Shown here: positions 38,226 to 49,509 of the stretch, piece by piece
How positions within the stretch are numbered: the stretch's first letter is position 1
Layout of the letters: every line of letters starts with the position of its first letter
Source of the DNA: Salpingoeca rosetta
Taxonomy: Eukaryota > Protista > Choanoflagellata
Length of the DNA: 64,000 bases
Direction: 5' to 3'
Assembly: GCA_033442325.1 (NCBI GenBank)
Contig: JAWQFM010000035.1
Coordinates: forward strand, 656,421 to 720,420
The notes under the pieces: generated by a model
The model's input: only the letters and a program-made list of their open reading frames with translations
Told to the model about the DNA's origin: nothing
Database searches by the model: none
Program-made: the position numbers and the translations under genes

Positions 38226-38498
38226 TGTACACACACACACACACACAGACACGCACCTACCCTGGCTGCTGGATTGATGCCCGGGGTGTGCTGGACAGCG
38301 TCGAGCCAGCGGATGAGGTCGTGGCACGCCTGGTAGTCCGCGTACGTCACCTGTGACTGTGGTTCGTCGGTGGTGCGCAGGTGTAGTGGGCTTTAGTGAG
38401 CAAAGGATGGCGTGTTTGCTGGTGCAAGGCGCAAGTGGCGTTGTTGTTCAACACAACGCACAACGCACAAAGAGCTCAGCACACACACACACACACAC

Positions 38499-38574
<76 letters not shown>

Positions 38575-38997
38575 AAGCCAACCAACCATGATGGTGCAGA
38601 CGGCGGCCCACATGGCAAAGTCCGCCAGTGAGGGCGATGAACCTGCAACACCTCCAGTGATGGTGGCAGCGTCGTTGATGATGGCGTTGATCTCTGCCAG
38701 CTCCTGTCGACGGATCTGTGCACCGCGGCCCTCCTGTACCGCCACCAGCGCCTCCGCACGCGCGCACATCTCCTCCACGTTGCCGCCCTGCAGCATCGGG
38801 TGCTGAGCGCACATGGCCTGGACACATGCAAAGATGCCCTGCGCAGGGGCGTCGGTCTTTCCTGCCGTGTATGTTGCAGTGGTGGCGGTCTCAGACACCT
38901 CTGTGCGCACGTCGAGCTGCAGCACCCCGGAGATGACGGACACCAGCCGCTCGAGGCTCTGCGCAACGTGTATGTGAGTGAGTGAGTGAGTGAGTGA

Positions 38998-39062
<65 letters not shown>

Positions 39063-39413
39063 TGTGTGTGTGTACACGTGTGTGTGTAAGGCGTGTGCGC
39101 ATACACAACATCACAGCACATGACACCACACGCCACCAACACTGCGACCAAACATGGGTGCTGGGCACGCACCTTGGGCAAGGTCAGTGTGCCTGGCGCA
39201 GAGCACCGCTTGATGGCGGGCCGTGATGCAGTGGCAGGTGTTGTCGTGGCAGTCTTGGCCGGTGCAGGTGCGGTGGCGCCGCTGGCCTTTCCAGCACGCT
39301 TGGCGAGAAAGCGAGCAATCTGCATGCATGGGAGAGGCGAACATAGAGCGCGCGTGGACATTTGCGTCGGTGAGCGATTAACAGTGAGCCCATTAGCAGC
39401 CAGCACGCATGAC

Positions 39414-39506
<93 letters not shown>

Positions 39507-39731
39507 CGCACACACACCTGCTCATCTGCGTCGTTCATTTCAATGGGAGCTGGCTCTTGCTGCGTGGGAGCAGCAGGAGCGGCTCCACGAGCCCTGGTAA
39601 CCAGACACCCACACATGTATAACTGCAGTGAGCAGGCAGTTCCCTTTAACCACATCCCCTCACAACAGCTCTCACAACGCATGGGCTTACGCGAGGAAGC
39701 GCTGCACTTGATCCTCAGCAAAGTTGGCCAT
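37912..39731 (-). CDS. GST-C-fold protein, AIMP3/EEF1E1-like (multisynthetase-complex scaffold candidate)
   Basis: Spliced MANFAEDQVQRFLA/ARGAAP..DEQ/IARFLAKR..PK/SLERL..SPSLADFAMWAAVCTIM/VTYADYQACHDLIRWLDAVQHTPGINPAAR/RNVVLN..*. SLAD and RW..VQH.PGI match the AIMP3-type GST C-terminus. Confidence 0.65.
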
Positions 39732-40194
39732 CTTGCTTGTTATCGTCTCTCGTGTGTGGCGGAAAATAATTGCACGCAATCGCCACCCAATATGGGACCA
39801 GCGAACTAGCGAAGACCCACCTCACAGACCCTCTCTCCTTCTCTCTGTCTCGCTACCGCCTTGCTTGCTTGCAAGCAACCAAGTAGACGTGCCTCGGCTA
39901 GCTCCCCTCTTCACTGCCTCACCCAATACACGTGTAATGGCTGTTGATTGAGCGATTGGTTCGCAAGGTCAGGGTAACGGGGAGAACAGACAAAGATCTA
40001 AAAGTCTAAAGGACACAAAATGCATGGCCTACTATTGCATGAACCATACAATCAACCAGAGGAGGCAGCGCACAGTTCACCTGTTCACGGCCGAGGGTGT
40101 AGAGAACGAGGCACAAACAGAACAGTCAAGGCGACCGGAGAGGGGCAGGGGGGCAAGAAAGGCAGTGAAGCCATGGAGAGACCTACTACACAGG

Positions 40195-40292
<98 letters not shown>

Positions 40293-40298
40293 CGGCAC

Positions 40299-41405
40299 CT
40301 AGACGAATTGGCAAATAGCCGGGCAACCAGGGCCGAGTGTGGCATCGTTGCTGTTGCCATAGAAATTCACGCAAGGGGCCTTGCTGAAGTCGCCGATGCA
40401 CTCAACCAGGCCGAGTTTCGGGTTGTTGCGAATGGCGAACGAGGCTGCAATCTCCGCACTGGACGATGTAAAGGTCAGGGACTTCAGCGCCGTGTTGCTT
40501 TGGATTTGCAGCACACCAAACACTCGAAGCGGCCGTTCAGGGCCGCCAATGGTCAGATCAGTGAGAACGTCGTTGGACTCAATGCGGATATCGCCGGTGC
40601 TGACCAAAGCTGGAAGGTGCAACCGCAACATTGCTGTGTTGCCCTTCACATCCATGGCGCCGGACACAACTTGGAGGGACGGAAAGTCGATGACTGTAAG
40701 AGCGTCGTTCGACTCAATCTTGAGATCCAGTCCGACGGATTGGAGCGCAGGGAGGTGAACCGCCGTCAAGGCATTGTTTGTACGGAAGTACACCTCCTCG
40801 CCAACCGTCCGGAGAGCGGGGAAGCTGATGCTCGACACGTGCAAGGACGTTGCTCTCAAGTTGCCGCCAACTGTGAGCAGGCGCGCCATGGTGGCTGCCG
40901 TTGTCGGGGAGAGTGGGTTGATGTCAATGGTACCGTCCACCACGGTGATGTCCTGTACAGCGTCGCAGCAGCACCGAGATATGTCGGAAGCCTCGCACAC
41001 GCCCGAGAGCACGCTGTCCCCATTGCCGCAGTCAACCTCGCCCGGTACTTTGATGAGGCACTCCGTCTCTGTCGTGTTTGGCGCTGCGAGAGCACGGACC
41101 TCGGCCAGCTGCATGCGCAGGTTGGCAGCCTCGCGCTTCAACGTGCTCACCTCGTTGATCAAATCATGCACGCTGACGCCATCCACAAACACGCCGCCAC
41201 CGCCGCCGCCAGTCGTGTTTGCGCGCGTCCACATGTACGTGTTGTTGAGGCTGCGGATGTGCAGGTTGTCGTTCTCGTCCGTCACAATCCTTGCCTTGTT
41301 CTTGCTGGCGCCACCGACGTCGCCAGCCGCGTCCCTGCCCATCGCCACAACAACCAACACCGCCACAACAGCGCCCAACGTCGCACGCGAGAGCCTTTGC
41401 ATCAT
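40299..41405 (-). CDS. Secreted protein A: signal peptide + cubilin-N-terminal-like module/coiled coil + receptor L-domain/LRR-type repeats
   Basis: Intronless 368 aa ORF: signal peptide, ARIVTDENDNLHIRS, VFVDGVSVHDLINEVSTLKREAANLRMQL, RCCCD, repeats LxxVGxxLxIxxNxxLxxIxFPxL, ends CPAIC. Confidence 0.85.
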   Translation of the reverse strand: MMQRLSRATLGAVVAVLVVVAMGRDAAGDVGGASKNKARIVTDENDNLHIRSLNNTYMWTRANTTGGGGGGVFVDGVSVHDLINEVSTLKREAANLRMQLAEVRALAAPNTTETECLIKVPGEVDCGNGDSVLSGVCEASDISRCCCDAVQDITVVDGTIDINPLSPTTAATMARLLTVGGNLRATSLHVSSISFPALRTVGEEVYFRTNNALTAVHLPALQSVGLDLKIESNDALTVIDFPSLQVVSGAMDVKGNTAMLRLHLPALVSTGDIRIESNDVLTDLTIGGPERPLRVFGVLQIQSNTALKSLTFTSSSAEIAASFAIRNNPKLGLVECIGDFSKAPCVNFYGNSNDATLGPGCPAICQFV

Positions 41406-41708
41406 GTCTTTGCTTTTGATTGATTTGAGAGAAATGTGTACGCACGCGAAAAAGAAAGAGGGAAAGTCGACGATGCATGTCGGTTGTCGTGTGCTGGGTG
41501 GGGGTGGAAGGTTACTACTGTTGAATAGTGTGGTGTGACAGGAGAGCAGGATGAGGGTAGCAAGAAGATATTTGGGTACGTGGACGCACGTCTACACGTG
41601 GCCTAAGAGATGGAGGATGAACCACGAAAGTGGAAGCAATATCGAGCAGGAGAGGGAAGGAACTATGACAACACCACTCAAAGAGCGGTGCAGGAGGTGG
41701 CTCATCAT

Positions 41709-43003
41709 TCAAGAACACTGCGAAGGACAGTTGTTGTCAAGGGCAATGGGACCAGTCAAGATGAGGCAGTCACCCGGGGCGTTAATGGGTGCAGTGCAGC
41801 TGACTTGTAGGGTTTCCTCGCCAGAGTGATTGATGACTATGGGTGCAAGGGTGTTCAGCTCCGCCGCAAACGATATCTGGGAGAGGTCTGGGTTGCCATA
41901 AATGTCAATGCCGCCGTGAATGTTGATGGAGAGGCCGTTGACGTTGTCACCAAGCACCAGCTGACTTAGATACTGGTTGTCGGAGATATCCATCTTGCCT
42001 CCGACCGCCGACAGCGTCGAGAAGTCAAGCGAGGACACGGCGAGTTCTCGAAGGGTCAAGTCACCCGTCACAGACGCAAGCGACATTACGCTCACGGCGG
42101 ACAGTGTTGGGTTATTGCTGATAGTGAGTGGGCCGTCGACAACGGAGAGCTTGGAAGTCACCACGGTCGAGAGTTGATGGTTATTGCTGATCACCACGCC
42201 ACCAGCGTGGAAGAGGGCTGGGGCGTAGAAGGTAGTAAGCGCCACGTTCTGCAAAAGCACCACCATGCCACCGACAGTGTGGAGGGAGGCGAAGAGCAAG
42301 GTTTGCAGCCCCACCCCTTCAACCTCGAGTTTGCCGAGAACGCTGGTCAATTCCGACAACTCGACACCTGGGTCTGCGTGTGTGTCCATGAGCAGGTGTC
42401 CGTGAACCATCTCGAGGTCAGACACTTCCTCGCAACAGCAGTGATTCACGTCCTGCGCCTCAGTGACAATGTCTGGTATGGTGTTGGCTTTTGTGCAGTC
42501 AAGGCTGGGGAAGTTACCACCAGTGGTCGTGCTCGGTGGCTGCGTTGTGGTTGCCGCAGCTGCTGTGGTTGTGCTGGTGTTTGTTGCGGGCAGGAGCGAG
42601 CGCACGTGCGCCAATTCTTGTTGCAGCTGCTCCACCTTGGCTTCCAGGTCCGCAAACCGCTCAAACATGCGGCCCAGGTTCTGGCCGTTCACAAACACGC
42701 TGCCACTGCTGCTTGTGTTGGTGGTGGTGGTGGTGGTGCCATTGCCGCCGTCGATCGGGCTCTGTTGTCGGGTGTTGATGAAGGTGTTGTTCAAGCTCGT
42801 GATGTGCAGGTTCTTGTACTCGTCAGACACGATGCTCGCCTTCCCACTCTGTCCCTGCTGCTGCTGTCCCTGCTGCTGCTGTTGCTGCGCCTCTCCCTGC
42901 ACCAGCACGCCGACTCCGCCACACGCAACAATGGCCGCTACCAGCGCGAGTAGGACAGCAGCCCGCGCAGGCACACATCCTCTTCGCGACGCGTGCGTGC
43001 CTC
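41709..43003 (-). CDS. Secreted protein B, paralog of A; start codon unresolved
   Basis: ASIVSDEYKNLHITSLNNTF..VFVNGQNLGRMFERFADLEAKVEQLQQEL, HCCCE, same repeats, ends NCPSQCS*. The ORF-track start at 43079 is TTG and no in-frame ATG precedes the signal peptide. A CAG acceptor near 43004 suggests a small upstream exon. Confidence 0.8.
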
Positions 43004-43108
43004 CTGTGTTGCTTGTTGTGGGTGGGAAAGCACAGAGGAAACGAGAGGAAAGTGCGAAAGAAACCACAAGCGCACACAAAACACCACGGCAAAACGCTCT
43101 TGACGTGC

Positions 43109-43640
43109 ATGCATGGCATGATTGATGGACACTGTCCTCCTGTCAGCACCGCACAAAGACACACAACCCCACTCATGTCTTCTTCCGCCAAGCAACACGG
43201 TGGCTCCTCTGCAGGGATGCGGCAAGGACAGGGTGGTGTGGATCCACCGGATGCGGATGCGGTGGTGGTGGTGGGGCTGGGGACGTGGGCGCTGATTGCT
43301 GCGCAGTTGGCGAAGAGCTCACCGCGCACTTTATTCAACCTCATGATGACAAGCAAGGAGTTCTACGCGTCCTTGCCGTTTGCACTGCCAAAGTGGTGCC
43401 TGGAACACGCGTACAACCCAGCCAAGGCATCGCCCGCCACCACTTGGCTGCCTCGCCCGTGCCACGACAGCGCACAAGCAAGCACGAGCACGTCCGATTC
43501 GCAGCGACCCAGGAACTCACAGCGGAACCACCAGCAAAGATCACGATCCCCCCACACGCAACAACAACCACAGCAACAGCAAAGGTCGGGACCCCCCTGC
43601 ATACAACAACAACGACCGCAGCAACGGCAAAGACCACAGC

Positions 43641-43687
<47 letters not shown>

Positions 43688-45514
43688 CGACCACTACAAC
43701 CACGGCAACCAGAGCAGCAGCACGCACAGTCACAAGAAAGGTGGTGGCTCGAACGGTTCCTCGTGCATTCATGGCTTGGTGTGTGGTGGCTCGTGCGTGA
43801 GACAGAGGCAGTCGAGTGCGCGGCCACCGCCAACACGCGCATGTTCTCCGCGTGCGTACGCGTGGAGTTTGACCGCAGGCCTTCACCGGCACGGGTGGAA
43901 GGCTGGCTGTGGGGGTGCGATGACACAAGTGAGCCGCCAGCCGATGCGCCCGCCGCGCCCCGTGATGACGCCCTGGCAGCCCGCGTGCGCGTGTCTGTGG
44001 ACCTGTTCACGCAGGTTCAGGCCGACCGACTCACGGCGTTCCTCAAGAGGCTCGTCCCAGCTGTGGACCACGTGAACGTTGTCGTCCACGCCACAGCGCA
44101 CGGGGGCGTGCAGCTGCTAACAATCCACGACGCGCCAGCCCTTGATCTGGAGCTGCACACGACGCTGCCTTCCGTCAGTTTGCACAACATCCGCAACGTG
44201 AGCATCATGTCCACGGAACAGCAGGAGCTGCGCGGCGTCATGCACAACGTGGAGTGCGTGCAGGTGTTCAACGACGTGAGCCCGTCCGAGGACTTTCAGT
44301 TGCTTGGAGGCATCCCCAGCGTCCACATTGAGCACACGGCGATTCTGCACAGCCTCTGGTTCCTGCAAGACGCACACCGCGTGCACCTTTGCAATTGCGG
44401 CATCCCAGACATGGAGCCCATTGCCCACATCCGACACCTCATCCTCGACAACTGTGAAACCGACGAGGACGAGTCGGAGAACCCCACCTTCACGGGGGAG
44501 GACATTTCGTTGGTGGACATGCAGCACATGTACGGCACGCTGTCAATGCCATACGCCACCAGAGTGGTGGTTGACAACTGCGACCTCATCAACAGCGTGC
44601 GGTGCGCGCGGCGCCTCTCGTACATGAAGCTTGTCATGTGCGAGCACTTGACGACGCTGCCGGAGTTTGAGCACGTGGACCATTTAGAGCTGATTGGTGA
44701 ATGGAGCATCGAAGAGCTGCAGCGGGTCGCTCCCTTGACAGACAAGCTCACCCTGTCGTACATGGGCGCGGACGCGCGCGTGCTCCACGCGCCCCTGGCG
44801 TGTGTCAACGTCACCCGCAACTGGCACACGTATTTTGAGGGAGATCACGCTGGTGCCCCGAGCGAGCCCGTGCCGCCAACTGTGGACCGTGTGCACCTGG
44901 ACCTGTGCGACATGGAGCAAGTGTGCGAGGTCGTGGTGCAGCTGTGCCATGTGAAGGACATTACGCTTGTGTTCAAAACAACCGTGCGCGTGGACGTGAG
45001 CCCCCTTACTGCTGTGCGCTCGCTGCGTCTTAGCGCCAGCTTCGACACAGCGCACCCACAGCTTGTGGGGCTGGCATCCCTCGCACACCTGCACTCCCTG
45101 CATCTCTCCTACATGCACTTGGACGGCGTCACCATCACCTGCCCCACCGTATCGCTGCGCGGGTGCACTGGCACGGCCGCCATCATTGGGGTGCGCGACG
45201 CACATGTGGAGGGCACGCACCTCCGTGTGACGGAGGTGCGGGCCGTTGACAACCTTGAGCTGGAAGGTGTCAAGCATGTTGGCGCAGTGACAAACGTGGT
45301 TTCATGTTCTGTTCGCTTCGACCTTCCCACCCGCCCGCGGGTGCTGAATGGCGTGCGGCGCCTCACCTTGCATCGGTGCACTGTCTCCGACCTCACCTGC
45401 TTCGCTGACGTGCAAGTGCTGCGCGTTCGCCAGTGCTCTGGGCCTCGCAGCGTGCTGCCTGTCACTGGCACGTGGGATCGGCGTGTGCACCCTTTCCCAA
45501 CCAGCATACGTTGA
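43109..45514 (+). CDS. Intronless F-box-like/leucine-rich-repeat protein
   Basis: About 800 aa ORF (first ATG 43109, possibly 43175). F-box-like TWALIAAQL..LFNLMMTSKEF, a poly-Q linker, then degenerate LRRs (LQDAHRVHLCNCGIPDMEPIAHIRHLILDNC; LNGVRRLTLHRCTVSDLTCFADVQVLRVRQC). Confidence 0.7.
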
Positions 45515-45541
45515 TAGGGTGATTTTGATGTGCGTGCTTTA

Positions 45542-45636
<95 letters not shown>

Positions 45637-46475
45637 ACGTGTTACGTGTGTGTGTGTGTGTGTGTGTGTAAATACGTGTTACGTGTGTGTGCGTGTGTGT
45701 GTGGTCCTCTGCCTGCCTGTGCCTCCTCTCCCCCTCTCCTCCCCCCCCCCCTCTCCTTCTGTCGGGTTGCTCCCAATGGATCCATGCATGCTTCTGTGTC
45801 CATTGCCACCAAAGGGTCATTTATTTCGGTCAAAGCAATGCGTCAACGCTCAAACAGAGCAAACAAAGCAGCCAAAGGACATACAGAAGCTACAAACACA
45901 CGAACGAGCGATGGGAGCGCGAGGGAAAGCTTGTCAAGGAAGGAGGGAATGATGCGTGTCGGTAAAAGTAGGTAGTGTAGGGTAGCCATGGTGTGCACAT
46001 CAAGTGCCATGCAAAGCAAATGACAGTGGCCTCTCCTCAAAAGACGATGCAAACAGAGCAAGGCTTTGCTCCCGCTCAACGCAAAGAAAATGGGGGGGGG
46101 GGGTAACGCAAGCAGCGAAAGGGAGCGGGTAAGCAAGCAACAAAACAAAAGAACGCAGAAAGAAACAAGCAGCTGTAGACACGGCGAACAAAGCTGTCCA
46201 GAAGGCAGGGGGGGGGGACAAAAGCACAGCGGGAAGGAGCACGGCGTGCGAGTGGTAGGTGGCGTTGCGTGCGCACCGTCAGCAAGCATGCCATCAAAGA
46301 ACATAAACGGAACAGAGGCAGTCAACGGTCAACAGGCGTTGTCGAAAGCCAACAACAGAAGAGATGTTGTCGACATAGTCATCAGCAAACGCGGAGAACG
46401 CAGAAGACGTGCCCTCAAGCGCGTCCAACAAACCCAAACAAAACACAAAACACATGCACATGCACGCATGTATGG

Positions 46476-47720
46476 CTACTCGAGAGTAAGAAAGCATGAG
46501 CCTGGGCAGTTGGTTGTCATCACACCATCGTCGATGTCCACACACTCGACGTTAATGTCGCTGCAGTCAAGAGCACTGAGTGGGTTGCCCTTGAGAAACA
46601 GGCCACCCCCAATGGACAGCGACTGCGTGAGGGCCAGCTGTGTGATGGCGTTGTTGGCGAGGTCCAAATGGCCACCAATGGAGGTGAGCGAGTTGAAGTG
46701 AACGGCGGTGAGAGCGTTCTTGGCGAGGTCGACATTGCGGCCAACAGACGTGAGGCTGCCAAAGTCGATGGAGGAGAGATAGTTCTCGGAGGCATCCAAG
46801 TCCAGGCCAATGGCGTTCATGGTGAGGGGAAGATGCAGGCTCTGCAGCTTGTTGCGGGACACGCGCAAGCTGCCACCAACGGAGACGAGCTGGCTAAAGT
46901 TGATGGAGAGCATGGCATCGCTGTGCAGGGTGAGGTCCGAGCCCACAGCCTGCAGCTTGCCGAGGTCGACGGATTCCAGGGCGACGCTGTTCAGCAGGAA
47001 CTGGCCATCGACGCGCGACAGCTCGCCGAGATTGAGGCTGGTGAGGTTGCGGTGGAGGAGGCTGACTGTGCTGACACGGGAGACGCTGCCGAGGTTGAGG
47101 GTTTGAAGCGCGTCGCTGCTGAGGATGAGCGGGCCTGGGATCTCCTGCAGGGCGCCAAACTCGATGCTGGTGAAGCTCCCCCTGCTGCTGAGAATGCCAC
47201 CGCCGATGCTGACCATGTTTCCAAAGGACACGGTCTTGGCATTGGGGTCGATGTACACGGCGCCGGAGACGTGCGTGAGCTGGTAGAAGGCGTCGCAGCA
47301 GCAGTGGACGACCGTCTCGGCTTCACACGCGCCGATGCCCAGGACAGCGTCGCGCGAGGCCTGGCTGTCGCAGTTGAGGTGCTCGACGCGGTTTCCCTGG
47401 CACACCACGGATGGCGGGGCGACCAAGGCTTCCAGTGCCCGCATGCGAACTTGTTGCTCGCGCATGGTTGAGATGAGGTCGATGTCGCCGAGGTAGACGG
47501 TGCCATTCCAGTGGGGCTCGAGGAAGATGCTGCGAGCGCTCTCGATCCGCAGGTTGTTGCCGTCGTCCGTGACAATGCGCGGGCGTGTGGGCCCACTCCC
47601 ACCCTGTCCTGCATCTGCTGCGACTGCTGGGTTTGTGGTGCACAGCAGCATTAGCAGCACGCAAGGCAGCAGCAAGCAGCGGTCCTGCTGCAGCAATCGT
47701 TGTCGCTGTTGTCTCATCAT
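46476..47720 (-). CDS. Secreted protein C, paralog of A and B
   Basis: ATG at 47720 (MMRQQ..LLLPCVLLMLLCTTNPAVAA), PRIVTDDGNNLRIESARSIFLEPHWNGTVYLGDIDLISTMREQQVRMRALE, HCCCD, about ten 22-aa repeats (LTSVGRNVDLAKNALTAVHFNS), ends NCPGSC. Confidence 0.87.
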   Translation of the reverse strand: MMRQQRQRLLQQDRCLLLPCVLLMLLCTTNPAVAADAGQGGSGPTRPRIVTDDGNNLRIESARSIFLEPHWNGTVYLGDIDLISTMREQQVRMRALEALVAPPSVVCQGNRVEHLNCDSQASRDAVLGIGACEAETVVHCCCDAFYQLTHVSGAVYIDPNAKTVSFGNMVSIGGGILSSRGSFTSIEFGALQEIPGPLILSSDALQTLNLGSVSRVSTVSLLHRNLTSLNLGELSRVDGQFLLNSVALESVDLGKLQAVGSDLTLHSDAMLSINFSQLVSVGGSLRVSRNKLQSLHLPLTMNAIGLDLDASENYLSSIDFGSLTSVGRNVDLAKNALTAVHFNSLTSIGGHLDLANNAITQLALTQSLSIGGGLFLKGNPLSALDCSDINVECVDIDDGVMTTNCPGSCFLTLE

Positions 47721-48294: not shown

Positions 48295-48319
48295 ATGGAC
48301 AACGAGGTGTGTATGGTGT

Positions 48320-48359
<40 letters not shown>

Positions 48360-48953
48360 TGTGTGAGTGTTTGTGGTGTGTTTGAGTTGAGCGAGATGCT
48401 GTTGTGAGCTGCGTGTGCAAAAAACTCCAACATCACCGCCAACACCACCACCACCACCATCGCCGTCATGGCTATCCTGCTCACTTCTCCCTACTGCGCT
48501 GCTCTGTTGTCACGAACAGGCGGATCGCACATTGATCTTCACGGGTCGGATAGGGCACGCTGACTTTATCAACGGCAGCTTCCAGCTCCAGGATGAGGTT
48601 GGTGTGTTGTGTGTGCTGTGTGTGTATGTGTGTGTACCTGTGTATGTGTACCTGTGTATGTTGTGTGTGTACCTGTGTGTGTTGTGTGTGTACCTGTGTT
48701 TAGCAGTCACTCCCGCAACACCTACGTACCTGTCTACGCCCTCAACCCTTGGTATGTCGTGTGTTTCGCAGACGGTGAATGGGAAGCCCGTGTACTTGTC
48801 AGACCACGAGATCCCCGATGGTTATGATGACGCGTCTGGCTGCAAGCTCTACCTCTACTTTCACGAGGGTGAGGCCGATGTGTGTGCTGAATGTGTGTGT
48901 ATGTGTTTTGTGGGTATGTCTGTGTGTGTGTGCGTGTGTGTGTTTTGTGGGTA

Positions 48954-49003
<50 letters not shown>

Positions 49004-49509
49004 ATAACAACTACATGTACCACCAGGCACTACAAGTGTTGATAATAGGGATACAAGGACGCAGGGGCCGGCCACGCTCCAGTTGTTTACCTTGTCCCTG
49101 TGTATGTAGTTGATCTGCTATTATACATAATTGGGGCAAGGCGGATATGATTTTCGTCAATGCGCGGACAATAGTCTGATGTATTTTTTTTTTTTTTTTT
49201 TGTGTTTTTCTATCTTATGGTGGCAGGGGCACCAGCGATTCTGTCCAGCACAGTGGGACACCCGGTTATGTAGCTTGACTAGATGGCAGGATACGGACGT
49301 ACTGGGCAGGATCAGTGTTAGTTGACAATGTTTGCCAGCTACGCCAATTTTCGTTGATGTCCGATTCACTTGACTGCACATCGGACAACTAGAGTAGAAT
49401 TTCAACGCCTCAATGACTCGGCAGTTGCAGCTCGTCTCGACACCTTGAGTGAATTTGCTGTGTTTGTTGGTGTGTCTGTGTGTGTGTCGTGTGTGTGTTT
49501 GTTGGTGTG

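What the first reader, a model, noticed from the sequence alone, without database searches (positions are those of the whole stretch)
40299..47720. Cluster of three secreted proteins joining a cubilin-like N-terminal trimerisation module to L-domain/LRR repeats
Seen: three divergent paralogs share signal peptide, (R/S)IV(T/S)DxxxNLxIxS, VF/Y(V/L)xGxx(L/V), a heptad coiled coil, a Cys cap with CCC(D/E), 22-25 aa LxxVGGxLxIxxN repeats and a terminal CPxxC. None has a TM or GPI tail. Known: cubilin's N-terminus (PRM/IxTxxGNLxF..G.I.LN..DL + coiled coil) forms a trimeric beta-helix that docks on the membrane protein amnionless; similar repeats build receptor L-domains (EGFR/insulin receptor) and fungal Ecm33-type proteins. 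Paralog C (PRIVTDDGNNLRIES..GTVYLGDIDL) is the closest match by eye. Inference: a diversified family of trimeric ligand-capture heads (prey, bacterial cue or matrix recognition), possibly tethered by an amnionless-like anchor. This would be a pre-metazoan, cubam-like modular receptor system.
Basis: partly seen in the sequence, partly recalled or inferred. Interest (0 to 1): 0.85.

Follow-up and report, generated by a model that had tools for sequence, protein, structure and literature searches.

The report
Secreted L-domain proteins with trimer stalk
Three neighbouring genes of the choanoflagellate Salpingoeca rosetta encode secreted leucine-rich "L-domain" binding proteins whose short N-terminal stalk is, of all solved structures, most like the three-chain head of animal cubilin, but the match is too weak to prove common descent and no membrane partner was found.

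Summary
The window is Salpingoeca rosetta scaffold GL832988.1. Three minus-strand paralogues (A 40299-41405, B 41709-43176, C 46476-47720) share these parts:
- a signal peptide;
- a ~40-residue four-strand segment;
- a ~25-residue heptad helix;
- a Cys cap with CCC(D/E);
- 22-23-residue L-domain/LRR repeats;
- a terminal CPxxC.

None has a TM segment or GPI tail.

The L-domain call is solid: Pfam PF01030 is above threshold for A and B, and the fold match to LRR solenoids reaches Z about 20.

The cubilin reading is partly supported. An AlphaFold model of C's N-terminus finds cubilin (6GJE) as rank 1 of 350,542 chains by Foldseek and rank 2 of 48,161 by VIA. Both alignments use the register of the sequence alignment. 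But the scores are at noise level (E 0.8; Z 2.5). Sequence tests give P about 5e-4 to 3e-3 for this one pre-chosen pair, and HMMER finds nothing.

Trimerisation is inferred from R-hxxhE motifs in the helices and from family members carrying one or three stalk modules (the third weak in one), never clearly two or four.

An amnionless-like anchor could not be tested. The same head also forms the ectodomain of TIR+SH2 membrane receptors. First-stage readers noted similar "cubilin-N-like" modules at eight other places in this genome; those notes are unchecked.

The parts
40299..41405 (-). Paralogue A, single exon, 368 aa (P0003)
   Evidence: ORF with ATG; called gene of 368 aa; Pfam Recep_L_domain 26.1 bits against a cut-off of 21.8
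41709..43176 (-). Paralogue B, PTSG_10808, 416 aa (P0002). Exon 1 is 43131-43176, the annotated intron is 42914-43130, and exon 2 is 41709-42913
   Evidence: Gene call and name; splice coordinates worked out from the sequence and reproduced as a 416-aa product; Recep_L_domain 22.3 bits; weak RNA coverage
46476..47720 (-). Paralogue C, single exon, 414 aa (P0001)
   Evidence: ORF; gene call; minus-strand RNA at depth 2.5-9.6 in run X17; AlphaFold model with mean pLDDT 78
47421..47585 (-). C stalk module: four short beta-strands (residues 46-83) plus a helix (82-100) that carries RMRALE
   Evidence: AF2 secondary structure; best PDB match is cubilin 6gje_B; R-hxxhE motif
41079..41297 (-). A stalk module (residues 37-84) plus heptad helix (85-109, carrying RMQLAE)
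   Evidence: Alignments A3/A4/A7; motif
42606..42842 (-). B stalk module (residues 40-100, with a Thr-rich loop inserted between strands 3 and 4) plus helix (carrying RFADLE)
   Evidence: Alignments; motif
47295..47402 (-). C Cys cap (C107, C117, C132, CCC140-142)
   Evidence: Cys positions; invariant CCC
40965..41060 (-). A Cys cap (C116, C126, C137, CCC145-147)
42432..42497 (-). B Cys cap (C155, CCC174-176); it lacks two of the cap cysteines
46566..47288 (-). C solenoid of about eleven 22-aa L-domain/LRR repeats
   Evidence: Lag-22 autocorrelation; pLDDT above 90; VIA Z 18-20.6 to internalins, Leptospira LRR proteins and decorin
40401..40958 (-). A L-domain repeats
   Evidence: Pfam PF01030 at residues 154-227; lag 23
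41805..42422 (-). B L-domain repeats
   Evidence: Pfam PF01030; the family profile hits 11,062 L-domain proteins

Best explanation
A, B and C are secreted proteins with no anchor of their own. Each has a ligand-binding head: a Cys-capped L-domain/LRR solenoid closed by a CPxxC cap. The head hangs from a short N-terminal stalk made of a beta-hairpin, two further strands and a ~25-residue coiled coil. The stalk most likely brings three chains together in parallel. The strands would wind into a small intertwined beta-helix and the helices into a three-stranded coiled coil, as in the N-terminus of cubilin. This would give a three-armed, collectin-like, multivalent binder. Shown here: the architecture, the secretion signals, the L-domain fold, transcription of C, and the family's distribution. 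Inferred: trimerisation, the beta-helix geometry, and ligand capture as the function. The stalk is a reusable cassette in this lineage. The same head without the stalk forms the ectodomain of type II membrane receptors with cytosolic TIR and SH2 domains. That argues for a recognition role rather than a purely structural one.
For: Architecture and secretion. L-domain: Pfam above the curated cut-off for A, B, PTSG_07860 and others; 11,062 profile hits, including proteins named Ecm33; fold Z up to 20.6. Stalk and cubilin: the N-terminal AF2 model (4 strands plus a helix, pLDDT 70.6) gives 6gje_B as Foldseek rank 1 of 350,542 chains (TMq 0.42, 25% identity). VIA places it at rank 2 of 48,161 chains, tied with rank 1, aligning model residues 1-62 to cubilin 41-104. 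The next hits are phage triple-beta-helix spike and baseplate proteins. The sequence alignment uses the same register, with C R46 opposite cubilin Q41: score 41, z 6.2, 0 of 5000 shuffles; hhalign P 4.5e-4 to 3e-3. [quoted passage not shown] Trimer: the R-h-x-x-h-E trimerisation motif defined in PMC3653964 is present in the helix of A, B, C and P0030, with a Lys variant in P0115. The background rate is 0.31 per 1000 aa. Three of the four multi-module relatives carry three tandem modules; the fourth has two clear modules and a weak third. Language-model neighbours of a triple-module region are phage tail-fibre and YadA-stalk clusters, at scores of 0.80-0.89, which count as leads only. Recognition role: the same cap, repeats and CPxxC follow TIR+SH2+TM in PTSG_03080, PTSG_02597 and a Microstomoeca roanoka protein.
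Against: No score linking the stalk to cubilin passes a database-wide threshold. The Foldseek E of 0.8 is what a chance top hit gets; the viral library's top hit has E 0.66. The VIA Z of 2.5, with rmsd 7.9 A, is far below the tool's stated noise band. HMMER sees nothing. Foldseek uses residue identity, so its ranking is not independent of the sequence resemblance that suggested cubilin in the first place. Only C, and weakly P0115, resemble cubilin pairwise; A and B do not. The strict R-hxxhE definition is met only by C and P0030, and the motif also occurs in some dimers. The modules are homologous, so motif counts are not independent. The AF2 models are single chains built from 5-sequence alignments, with N-terminal pLDDT of 43-77. 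No oligomer was modelled. Function and ligand are unknown. Expression is low, and A was not examined.
Confidence: 0.55

Rival explanations
1. These are ordinary lineage-specific secreted L-domain (Ecm33-like) matrix or coat proteins. The N-terminal segment is a choanoflagellate-specific spacer or small domain, and its resemblance to cubilin is chance. Its oligomeric state is unknown, possibly monomer or dimer.
For: All cubilin scores are at noise level. The DxxGNLxh hairpin motif is common; the top HMMER hits of the module profile are teneurin YD repeats and a sliding clamp. The closest named relatives of the head are fungal Ecm33 wall proteins. The N-terminal pLDDT is low.
Against: The protein chosen in advance came out as rank 1 and rank 2 in two PDB-wide searches, in the same register as the sequence alignment. 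Both modules sit at the mature N-terminus and run straight into a coiled coil. R-hxxhE motifs and the one-or-three module counts fit three-fold symmetry.
Confidence: 0.3
2. One reading: a pre-metazoan cubam-like system, in which the open N-terminal face of the trimeric beta-helix docks on an amnionless-like transmembrane protein that tethers and internalises the ligand-capture heads.
For: In cubilin the N-terminal strands (residues 42-49, with Met44 at the centre) form the amnionless interface, and an uncapped beta-helix end needs a partner (PMC6283879). The S. rosetta modules place a conserved Ile or Val at the Met44-equivalent position, right at the mature N-terminus. None of the proteins has an anchor of its own.
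Against: None of the 892 first-stage notes on this genome mentions one. No paper links amnionless or cubilin function to choanoflagellates. No candidate anchor lies in the cluster. The triple-module relatives place modules internally, which fits a stalk unit better than a dedicated docking head.
Confidence: 0.1
3. The three clustered paralogues assemble as an A:B:C heterotrimer rather than as homotrimers, as Drosophila cubam combines two cubilin paralogues.
For: There are exactly three divergent paralogues in one cluster. The Drosophila CUBAM abstract describes a tripartite complex with two cubilin paralogues (PMC8710305, listed).
Against: B has much lower RNA coverage than C in the same run. 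The helices differ in length and in the position of the motif. Single-module relatives occur alone on marine metagenome contigs.
Confidence: 0.1

Closest known systems
Cubilin N-terminal region (residues 36-135; PDB 6GJE, cubam)
   Same: It sits at the mature N-terminus of a secreted protein with no anchor of its own. The order of parts is the same: hairpin, two further short strands, a (G/N)D-x-D-L transition, then a coiled coil. It is the best PDB match of the modelled module. Paralogue C is 34% identical over 38 residues, with hydrophobic residues opposite cubilin's M44, V52, L54, I61, F63, I71, L73 and L78.
   Different: No score is significant. The module is followed by a Cys-capped L-domain solenoid, not by EGF and CUB domains. 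The coiled coil is shorter (~25 aa) and carries R-hxxhE. A and B have Gly- or Thr-rich loops inside the beta part. Relatives carry the module three times per chain. No amnionless partner is known.
Receptor L domain superfamily (Pfam PF01030), including fungal Ecm33/Sps2 and many bacterial proteins
   Same: The repeat sequence and fold match. Pfam scores are above threshold, and the family profile hits 11,062 proteins.
   Different: There is no GPI signal, unlike Ecm33. There is no furin-like Cys-rich domain or kinase, unlike EGFR and the insulin receptor. The family has its own CCC(D/E) N-cap and CPxxC C-cap, plus the N-terminal stalk.
Collectins and ficolins (trimeric neck coiled coil carrying three recognition heads)
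   Same: They work alike, by inference: a short trimerising neck presents three binding domains for multivalent recognition.
   Different: The domains are unrelated. Collectins use a collagen stalk and a C-type lectin or fibrinogen head; here there is a beta-helix/coiled-coil stalk and an L-domain head.
Phage tail spikes and fibres, and trimeric autotransporter stalks
   Same: These are three-chain beta-helix/coiled-coil stalk segments. They appear among the structural and language-model neighbours. The cubilin paper itself noted the likeness to phage and type VI secretion spikes.
   Different: All these hits are at noise level. The proteins here are eukaryotic secreted proteins with a different head.
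Extracellular LRR proteins (internalins, decorin, LRIG, Toll ectodomains)
   Same: They are the best fold matches of the head, Z 17-20.6 over about 290 residues.
   Different: Sequence identity is 14-22%. Pfam assigns the head to the L domain rather than to LRR families.

Membership tests
Receptor L domain (PF01030) | Score at or above Pfam's gathering cut-off of 21.8 bits | tested here: met
   A 26.1 bits, B 22.3 bits. C has no hit itself but aligns end to end with A and B. Relatives score 24.6-86 bits.
Receptor L domain (PF01030) | Single-stranded right-handed beta-solenoid of ~22-25-aa repeats | tested here: met
   AF2 pLDDT above 90 across the repeats; period 22-23 aa; VIA Z up to 20.6 to LRR-type solenoids.
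Fungal Ecm33/Sps2 wall proteins | C-terminal GPI-anchor signal | tested here: not met
   No C-terminal hydrophobic stretch; the proteins end 1-5 residues after CPxxC.
Cubilin (orthologue) | EGF repeats followed by CUB domains | tested here: not met
   Pfam finds no EGF or CUB domain in A, B or C.
Cubilin-type N-terminal trimerisation module | Significant sequence or profile similarity to cubilin residues 36-80 | tested here: inconclusive
   Pairwise, C has z 6.2 and 0 of 5000 shuffles as good. hhalign gives P 4.5e-4 to 3e-3 and probability 4-33%. HMMER gives 0.7-0.9 bits, and 6GJE is not listed at E<=10.
Cubilin-type N-terminal trimerisation module | Hairpin plus short strands plus coiled coil that superimposes on a 6GJE cubilin chain | tested here: inconclusive
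   6gje_B is Foldseek rank 1 (E 0.8, TMq 0.42) and VIA rank 2 (Z 2.5, rmsd 7.9 A). These scores are at noise level.
Cubilin-type N-terminal trimerisation module | Three chains intertwined into one beta-helix | not testable with these tools
   Only single-chain prediction is offered. Indirect support comes from R-hxxhE motifs and one-or-three module counts.
Cubam-like receptor system | An amnionless-type membrane partner with a three-faced beta-helix | not tested
   The protein-database searches were exhausted before an amnionless query could be made. There is no mention in the first-stage notes or in papers.

The most novel reading that the evidence does not exclude
The hairpin/beta-helix plus R-hxxhE coiled-coil unit is an ancient holozoan three-fold assembly cassette, homologous to cubilin's amnionless-docking head. 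Choanoflagellates would use it in two ways. Used once per chain, it gives homotrimers (A, B, C and marine relatives). Used three times per chain with ~40-residue Pro-rich return linkers, it gives single-chain pseudo-trimers (PTSG_10026, PTSG_04244, PTSG_11196 and probably PTSG_07860). In both cases it would display L-domain and other recognition heads. Animals would have kept only the cubilin version.
Probability: 0.3. Interest if true: 0.75.

Novelty: new variant of a known kind. Interest (0 to 1): 0.55.

Why it matters
Cubilin's intertwined N-terminal beta-helix was described in 2018 as an unexpected receptor design, conserved 'from insects to man' (PMC6283879).

If the S. rosetta stalk is the same device, three things follow:
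- The device predates animals.
- It was a general-purpose way of making three-armed secreted binders.
- The S. rosetta family offers small, intronless, genetically tractable proteins for studying how such trimers fold without amnionless, or with an unknown partner.

Independently of cubilin, the head domain links these secreted proteins to TIR+SH2 membrane receptors. [quoted passage not shown] The organism's behaviour is known to be steered by bacterial and algal cues (abstracts listed).

If the resemblance is chance, these remain an uncharacterised but unremarkable L-domain family.

Tried and rejected
- **Word-indexed homologue searches** with C, and with the N-terminal region of P0115, returned only the queries themselves. 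The 5-sequence profile added only L-domain proteins.
- **PDB sequence searches** with the whole-family profile and with the 3-, 6- and 16-module profiles gave only coiled coils, designed proteins, a sliding clamp and teneurin.
- **Pfam on the N-terminal pieces** gave nothing for A and C. B hit PF21467 (beta-galactosidase galactose-binding domain, 29.1 against 27.3 bits). It rests on a G-x-V-F-V-N-G-Q-x-L-G-R stretch next to a Thr-rich run and is absent from the paralogues, so I treat it as spurious.
- **Sarcoglycans**: I considered sarcoglycan-like strands, from my own recollection. No Pfam Sarcoglycan hit appeared at E<=10. The dystrophin-glycoprotein complex entry 8yt8 (chain O, which I did not identify) appears only at VIA rank 19, Z 2.1.
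- **ESM Atlas** searches by features and shape gave nothing usable for the module of C.
- **The viral structure library** gave only noise.
- **RNA reads** were too few to confirm or reject B's intron. The 'joints' at 43279/42870 are reads of CAG/CTG-type repeats, not splices.
- **Earlier organism guess**: the (CA)n microsatellites and intronless ORFs first suggested a kinetoplastid. The record name ruled that out.
- **Method note**: It matched 6gje_B residues 15-53 exactly, and only that verified stretch was used.

Full report
**Where this is.**
A protein identical to paralogue C is recorded on scaffold GL832988.1 (738,859 bp) of assembly GCA_000188695.1, so the window is from Salpingoeca rosetta. 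Cluster look-ups name paralogue B as PTSG_10808, 'Receptor L-domain domain-containing protein'. No paper in the library mentions these locus tags.

**The observation.**
Three minus-strand genes are present:
- A, 40299-41405, 368 aa.
- B, 41709-43176, 416 aa in the public model.
- C, 46476-47720, 414 aa.

A plus-strand gene of 765 aa lies between B and C. The three proteins align end to end at 26-32% identity, with more than 40 invariant columns. A family HMM finds only these three copies in the six-frame translation of the window.

Each protein has one hydrophobic stretch, at the N-terminus. None has a TM segment or a C-terminal hydrophobic tail. The mature chains hold 8-10 cysteines, grouped in an N-cap (with the invariant CCC) and a C-cap (CPxxC). 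The repeat period is 22 aa in C, 23 aa in A and marginal in B.

ORF B has no in-frame ATG. The annotated model supplies a 46-nt first exon and removes 217 nt (42914-43130). That removed stretch itself encodes an in-frame signal-peptide-like segment. The RNA reads were too few to decide between the two readings.

Stranded RNA-seq of the species shows transcripts of the expected strand over C and its 3' UTR (depth 2.5-9.6 in run X17, much lower in X16 and X18). Coverage over B is only weak.

**The head.**
Pfam's Receptor L domain scores above its curated cut-off in A and B. It also does so in relatives.

A profile of the three mature proteins hits 11,062 proteins at E<=0.001 among 1.84 billion representatives. 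Almost all the hits fall on the repeat region. They include fungal proteins named Ecm33 and many bacterial proteins.

The AlphaFold model of mature C has pLDDT above 90 across the repeats. It superimposes on LRR-type solenoids with Z up to 20.6. Foldseek agrees only weakly, at E about 1e-4. The 'L-domain/LRR repeat' part of the finding is therefore sound.

**The family.**
Proteins that also carry the N-terminal module are few.

Single-module members:
- A, B and C.
- A Tara Oceans marine-metagenome protein (P0115/P0151).
- Another marine-metagenome protein with a mucin-like linker (P0030).

Multi-module members, all from S. rosetta:
- PTSG_10026 (P0042), PTSG_04244 (P0103) and PTSG_11196 (P0028, which also has a VWFA domain) each have three modules in tandem. 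The modules are separated by roughly 35-55-residue linkers (Pro-rich in PTSG_10026).
- PTSG_07860 (P0124) has two clear modules and a degenerate third.

Observed counts are therefore one or three (the third module of PTSG_07860 is weak), never clearly two or four.

The same cap, repeats and CPxxC, without the module, follow a TM helix in PTSG_03080, PTSG_02597 and a Microstomoeca roanoka protein. In these the N-terminal cytosolic part carries TIR and/or SH2 domains. First-stage notes on this genome describe the same 'inverted Toll-like' receptors.

**The cubilin question: what cubilin looks like.**
In the crystal structure of cubam, cubilin residues 36-135 form an N-terminal hairpin, a three-turn beta-helix intertwined from three chains, and a coiled coil. 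The N-terminal strands (residues 42-49, with Met44 at the centre) dock on amnionless (PMC6283879).

**The cubilin question: sequence tests.**
I verified a 39-residue stretch of cubilin against 6gje_B and compared it with the modules.
- Pairwise, C aligns over all 38 residues with one gap: 13 identities, score 41, z 6.2, and none of 5000 shuffles as good.
- P0115 gives z 2.1. A, B and PTSG_07860 give z between about 0 and 1.2.
- hhalign with 3-, 5-, 6- and 16-module alignments always returns the same end-to-end register. P ranges from 4.5e-4 to 0.017 and probability from 1% to 33%.
- HMMER profiles score 0.7-0.9 bits, and 3-6% of shuffles do as well.
- No PDB-wide HMMER search lists 6GJE at E<=10.

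A raw score of 41 would be matched by chance many times in a database of PDB size. That last point is my own estimate from Karlin-Altschul statistics.

**The cubilin question: structure tests.**
An AlphaFold model of C residues 46-107 has four short strands and a helix, with mean pLDDT 70.6. I searched it without naming a target.
- Foldseek ranks 6gje_B first of 350,542 chains: E 0.8, probability 0.30, TMq 0.42, 25% identity.
- VIA-align ranks it second of 48,161 representatives, tied with the first: Z 2.5, rmsd 7.9 A, model residues 1-62 on cubilin 41-104.
- The next VIA hits are the phage phi92 spike and two phage baseplate proteins.

The register is the one given by the sequence alignment. 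However, these scores are what top chance hits receive. The unrelated viral library's best hit has E 0.66 and the same probability. Foldseek's score also includes residue identity, so its ranking is not independent of the sequence resemblance.

My reading is that cubilin is the closest known structure. The similarity in position, order of elements and hydrophobic pattern is real. Homology is possible but not demonstrated.

**Trimerisation.**
The helices of A, B, C and P0030 contain R-h-x-x-h-E, and P0115 has a Lys variant. This motif specifies parallel three-stranded coiled coils, though it also occurs in some dimers (PMC3653964). Only C (RMRALE) and P0030 (RLQALE) meet the strict residue definition.

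The one-or-three module count fits three-fold symmetry in either of two ways: three chains with one module each, or one chain with three modules. Serial stalk segments within a homotrimer are also possible.

Language-model neighbours of a triple-module region are phage tail-fibre, gp37-trimer and YadA-stalk clusters. Their scores (0.80-0.89) count only as leads.

No multimer could be modelled with these tools.

**Anchor.**
No first-stage note and no paper mentions one. Nothing in the cluster looks like an anchor. The 'cubam-like system' is therefore untested.

**Verdict.**
This is a real, expressed, lineage-restricted family of secreted L-domain proteins with a stalk module that Pfam does not recognise. 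It is probably trimeric and cubilin-like in design. It is a new variant of known kinds (L-domain binders; trimeric stalk-and-head proteins). The homology claim to cubilin remains open.

First-stage readers flagged 'cubilin-N-like' modules on other secreted proteins at eight further places in this genome. I did not check those notes. If they hold, the cassette is widespread in this organism.

Noticed in passing
P0065 (PTSG_03080), P0090 (PTSG_02597), P0082 (Microstomoeca roanoka); not in the window: The same CCC(D/E) Cys cap, L-domain repeats and CPxxC form the C-terminal ectodomain of type II membrane proteins. Their N-terminal cytosolic part has TIR and/or SH2 domains. The heads of A, B and C therefore belong to a receptor ectodomain family.
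   Followed up: partly
P0042 (PTSG_10026), P0103 (PTSG_04244), P0028 (PTSG_11196), P0124 (PTSG_07860): Relatives with several stalk modules have three in tandem, the third degenerate in PTSG_07860. The modules are separated by roughly 35-55-residue linkers (Pro-rich in PTSG_10026). Single-module proteins have exactly one. This pattern fits three-fold assembly, possibly as single-chain pseudo-trimers.
   Followed up: partly
window 42914-43130 (-): The annotated intron of paralogue B is in frame with exon 2 and encodes a strong signal-peptide-like stretch (KD19 up to 2.81), but the ORF has no in-frame ATG. Either the gene model or the start is uncertain. The RNA reads were too few to tell.
   Followed up: partly
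window 43217-45514 (+): A 765-aa gene on the opposite strand lies between B and C. It has a long poly-Gln/Pro tract and LRR-like C-terminal repeats, but no Pfam family above threshold. It is transcribed (depth 2-8.5 in run X17, plus-strand RNA). It is not related to the family.
   Followed up: partly
window 42576-42842 (-), N-terminus of B: There is a Pfam PF21467 (beta-galactosidase galactose-binding domain) hit just above its cut-off (29.1 against 27.3 bits) on the GSVFVNGQNLGR stretch plus the helix. It is absent from A and C and is probably spurious.
   Followed up: no
window about 38450-39720, 40150-40300, 45540-45800, 48300-49100: Long (CA)n/(GT)n microsatellites flank the genes and create many spurious Thr-His and Cys-Val ORFs on both strands.
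   Followed up: no
RNA runs X16-X18 laid on window 41730-47720: One of three RNA-seq runs of the same study (X17) has about ten times more reads over C and the middle gene than the other two. This suggests condition-dependent expression.
   Followed up: no
L005-L007 and L002-L004 (Tara Oceans and other marine metagenome contigs): Single-exon genes for single-module family members occur on short marine metagenome contigs. The family therefore exists in uncultured marine eukaryotes beyond S. rosetta.
   Followed up: partly
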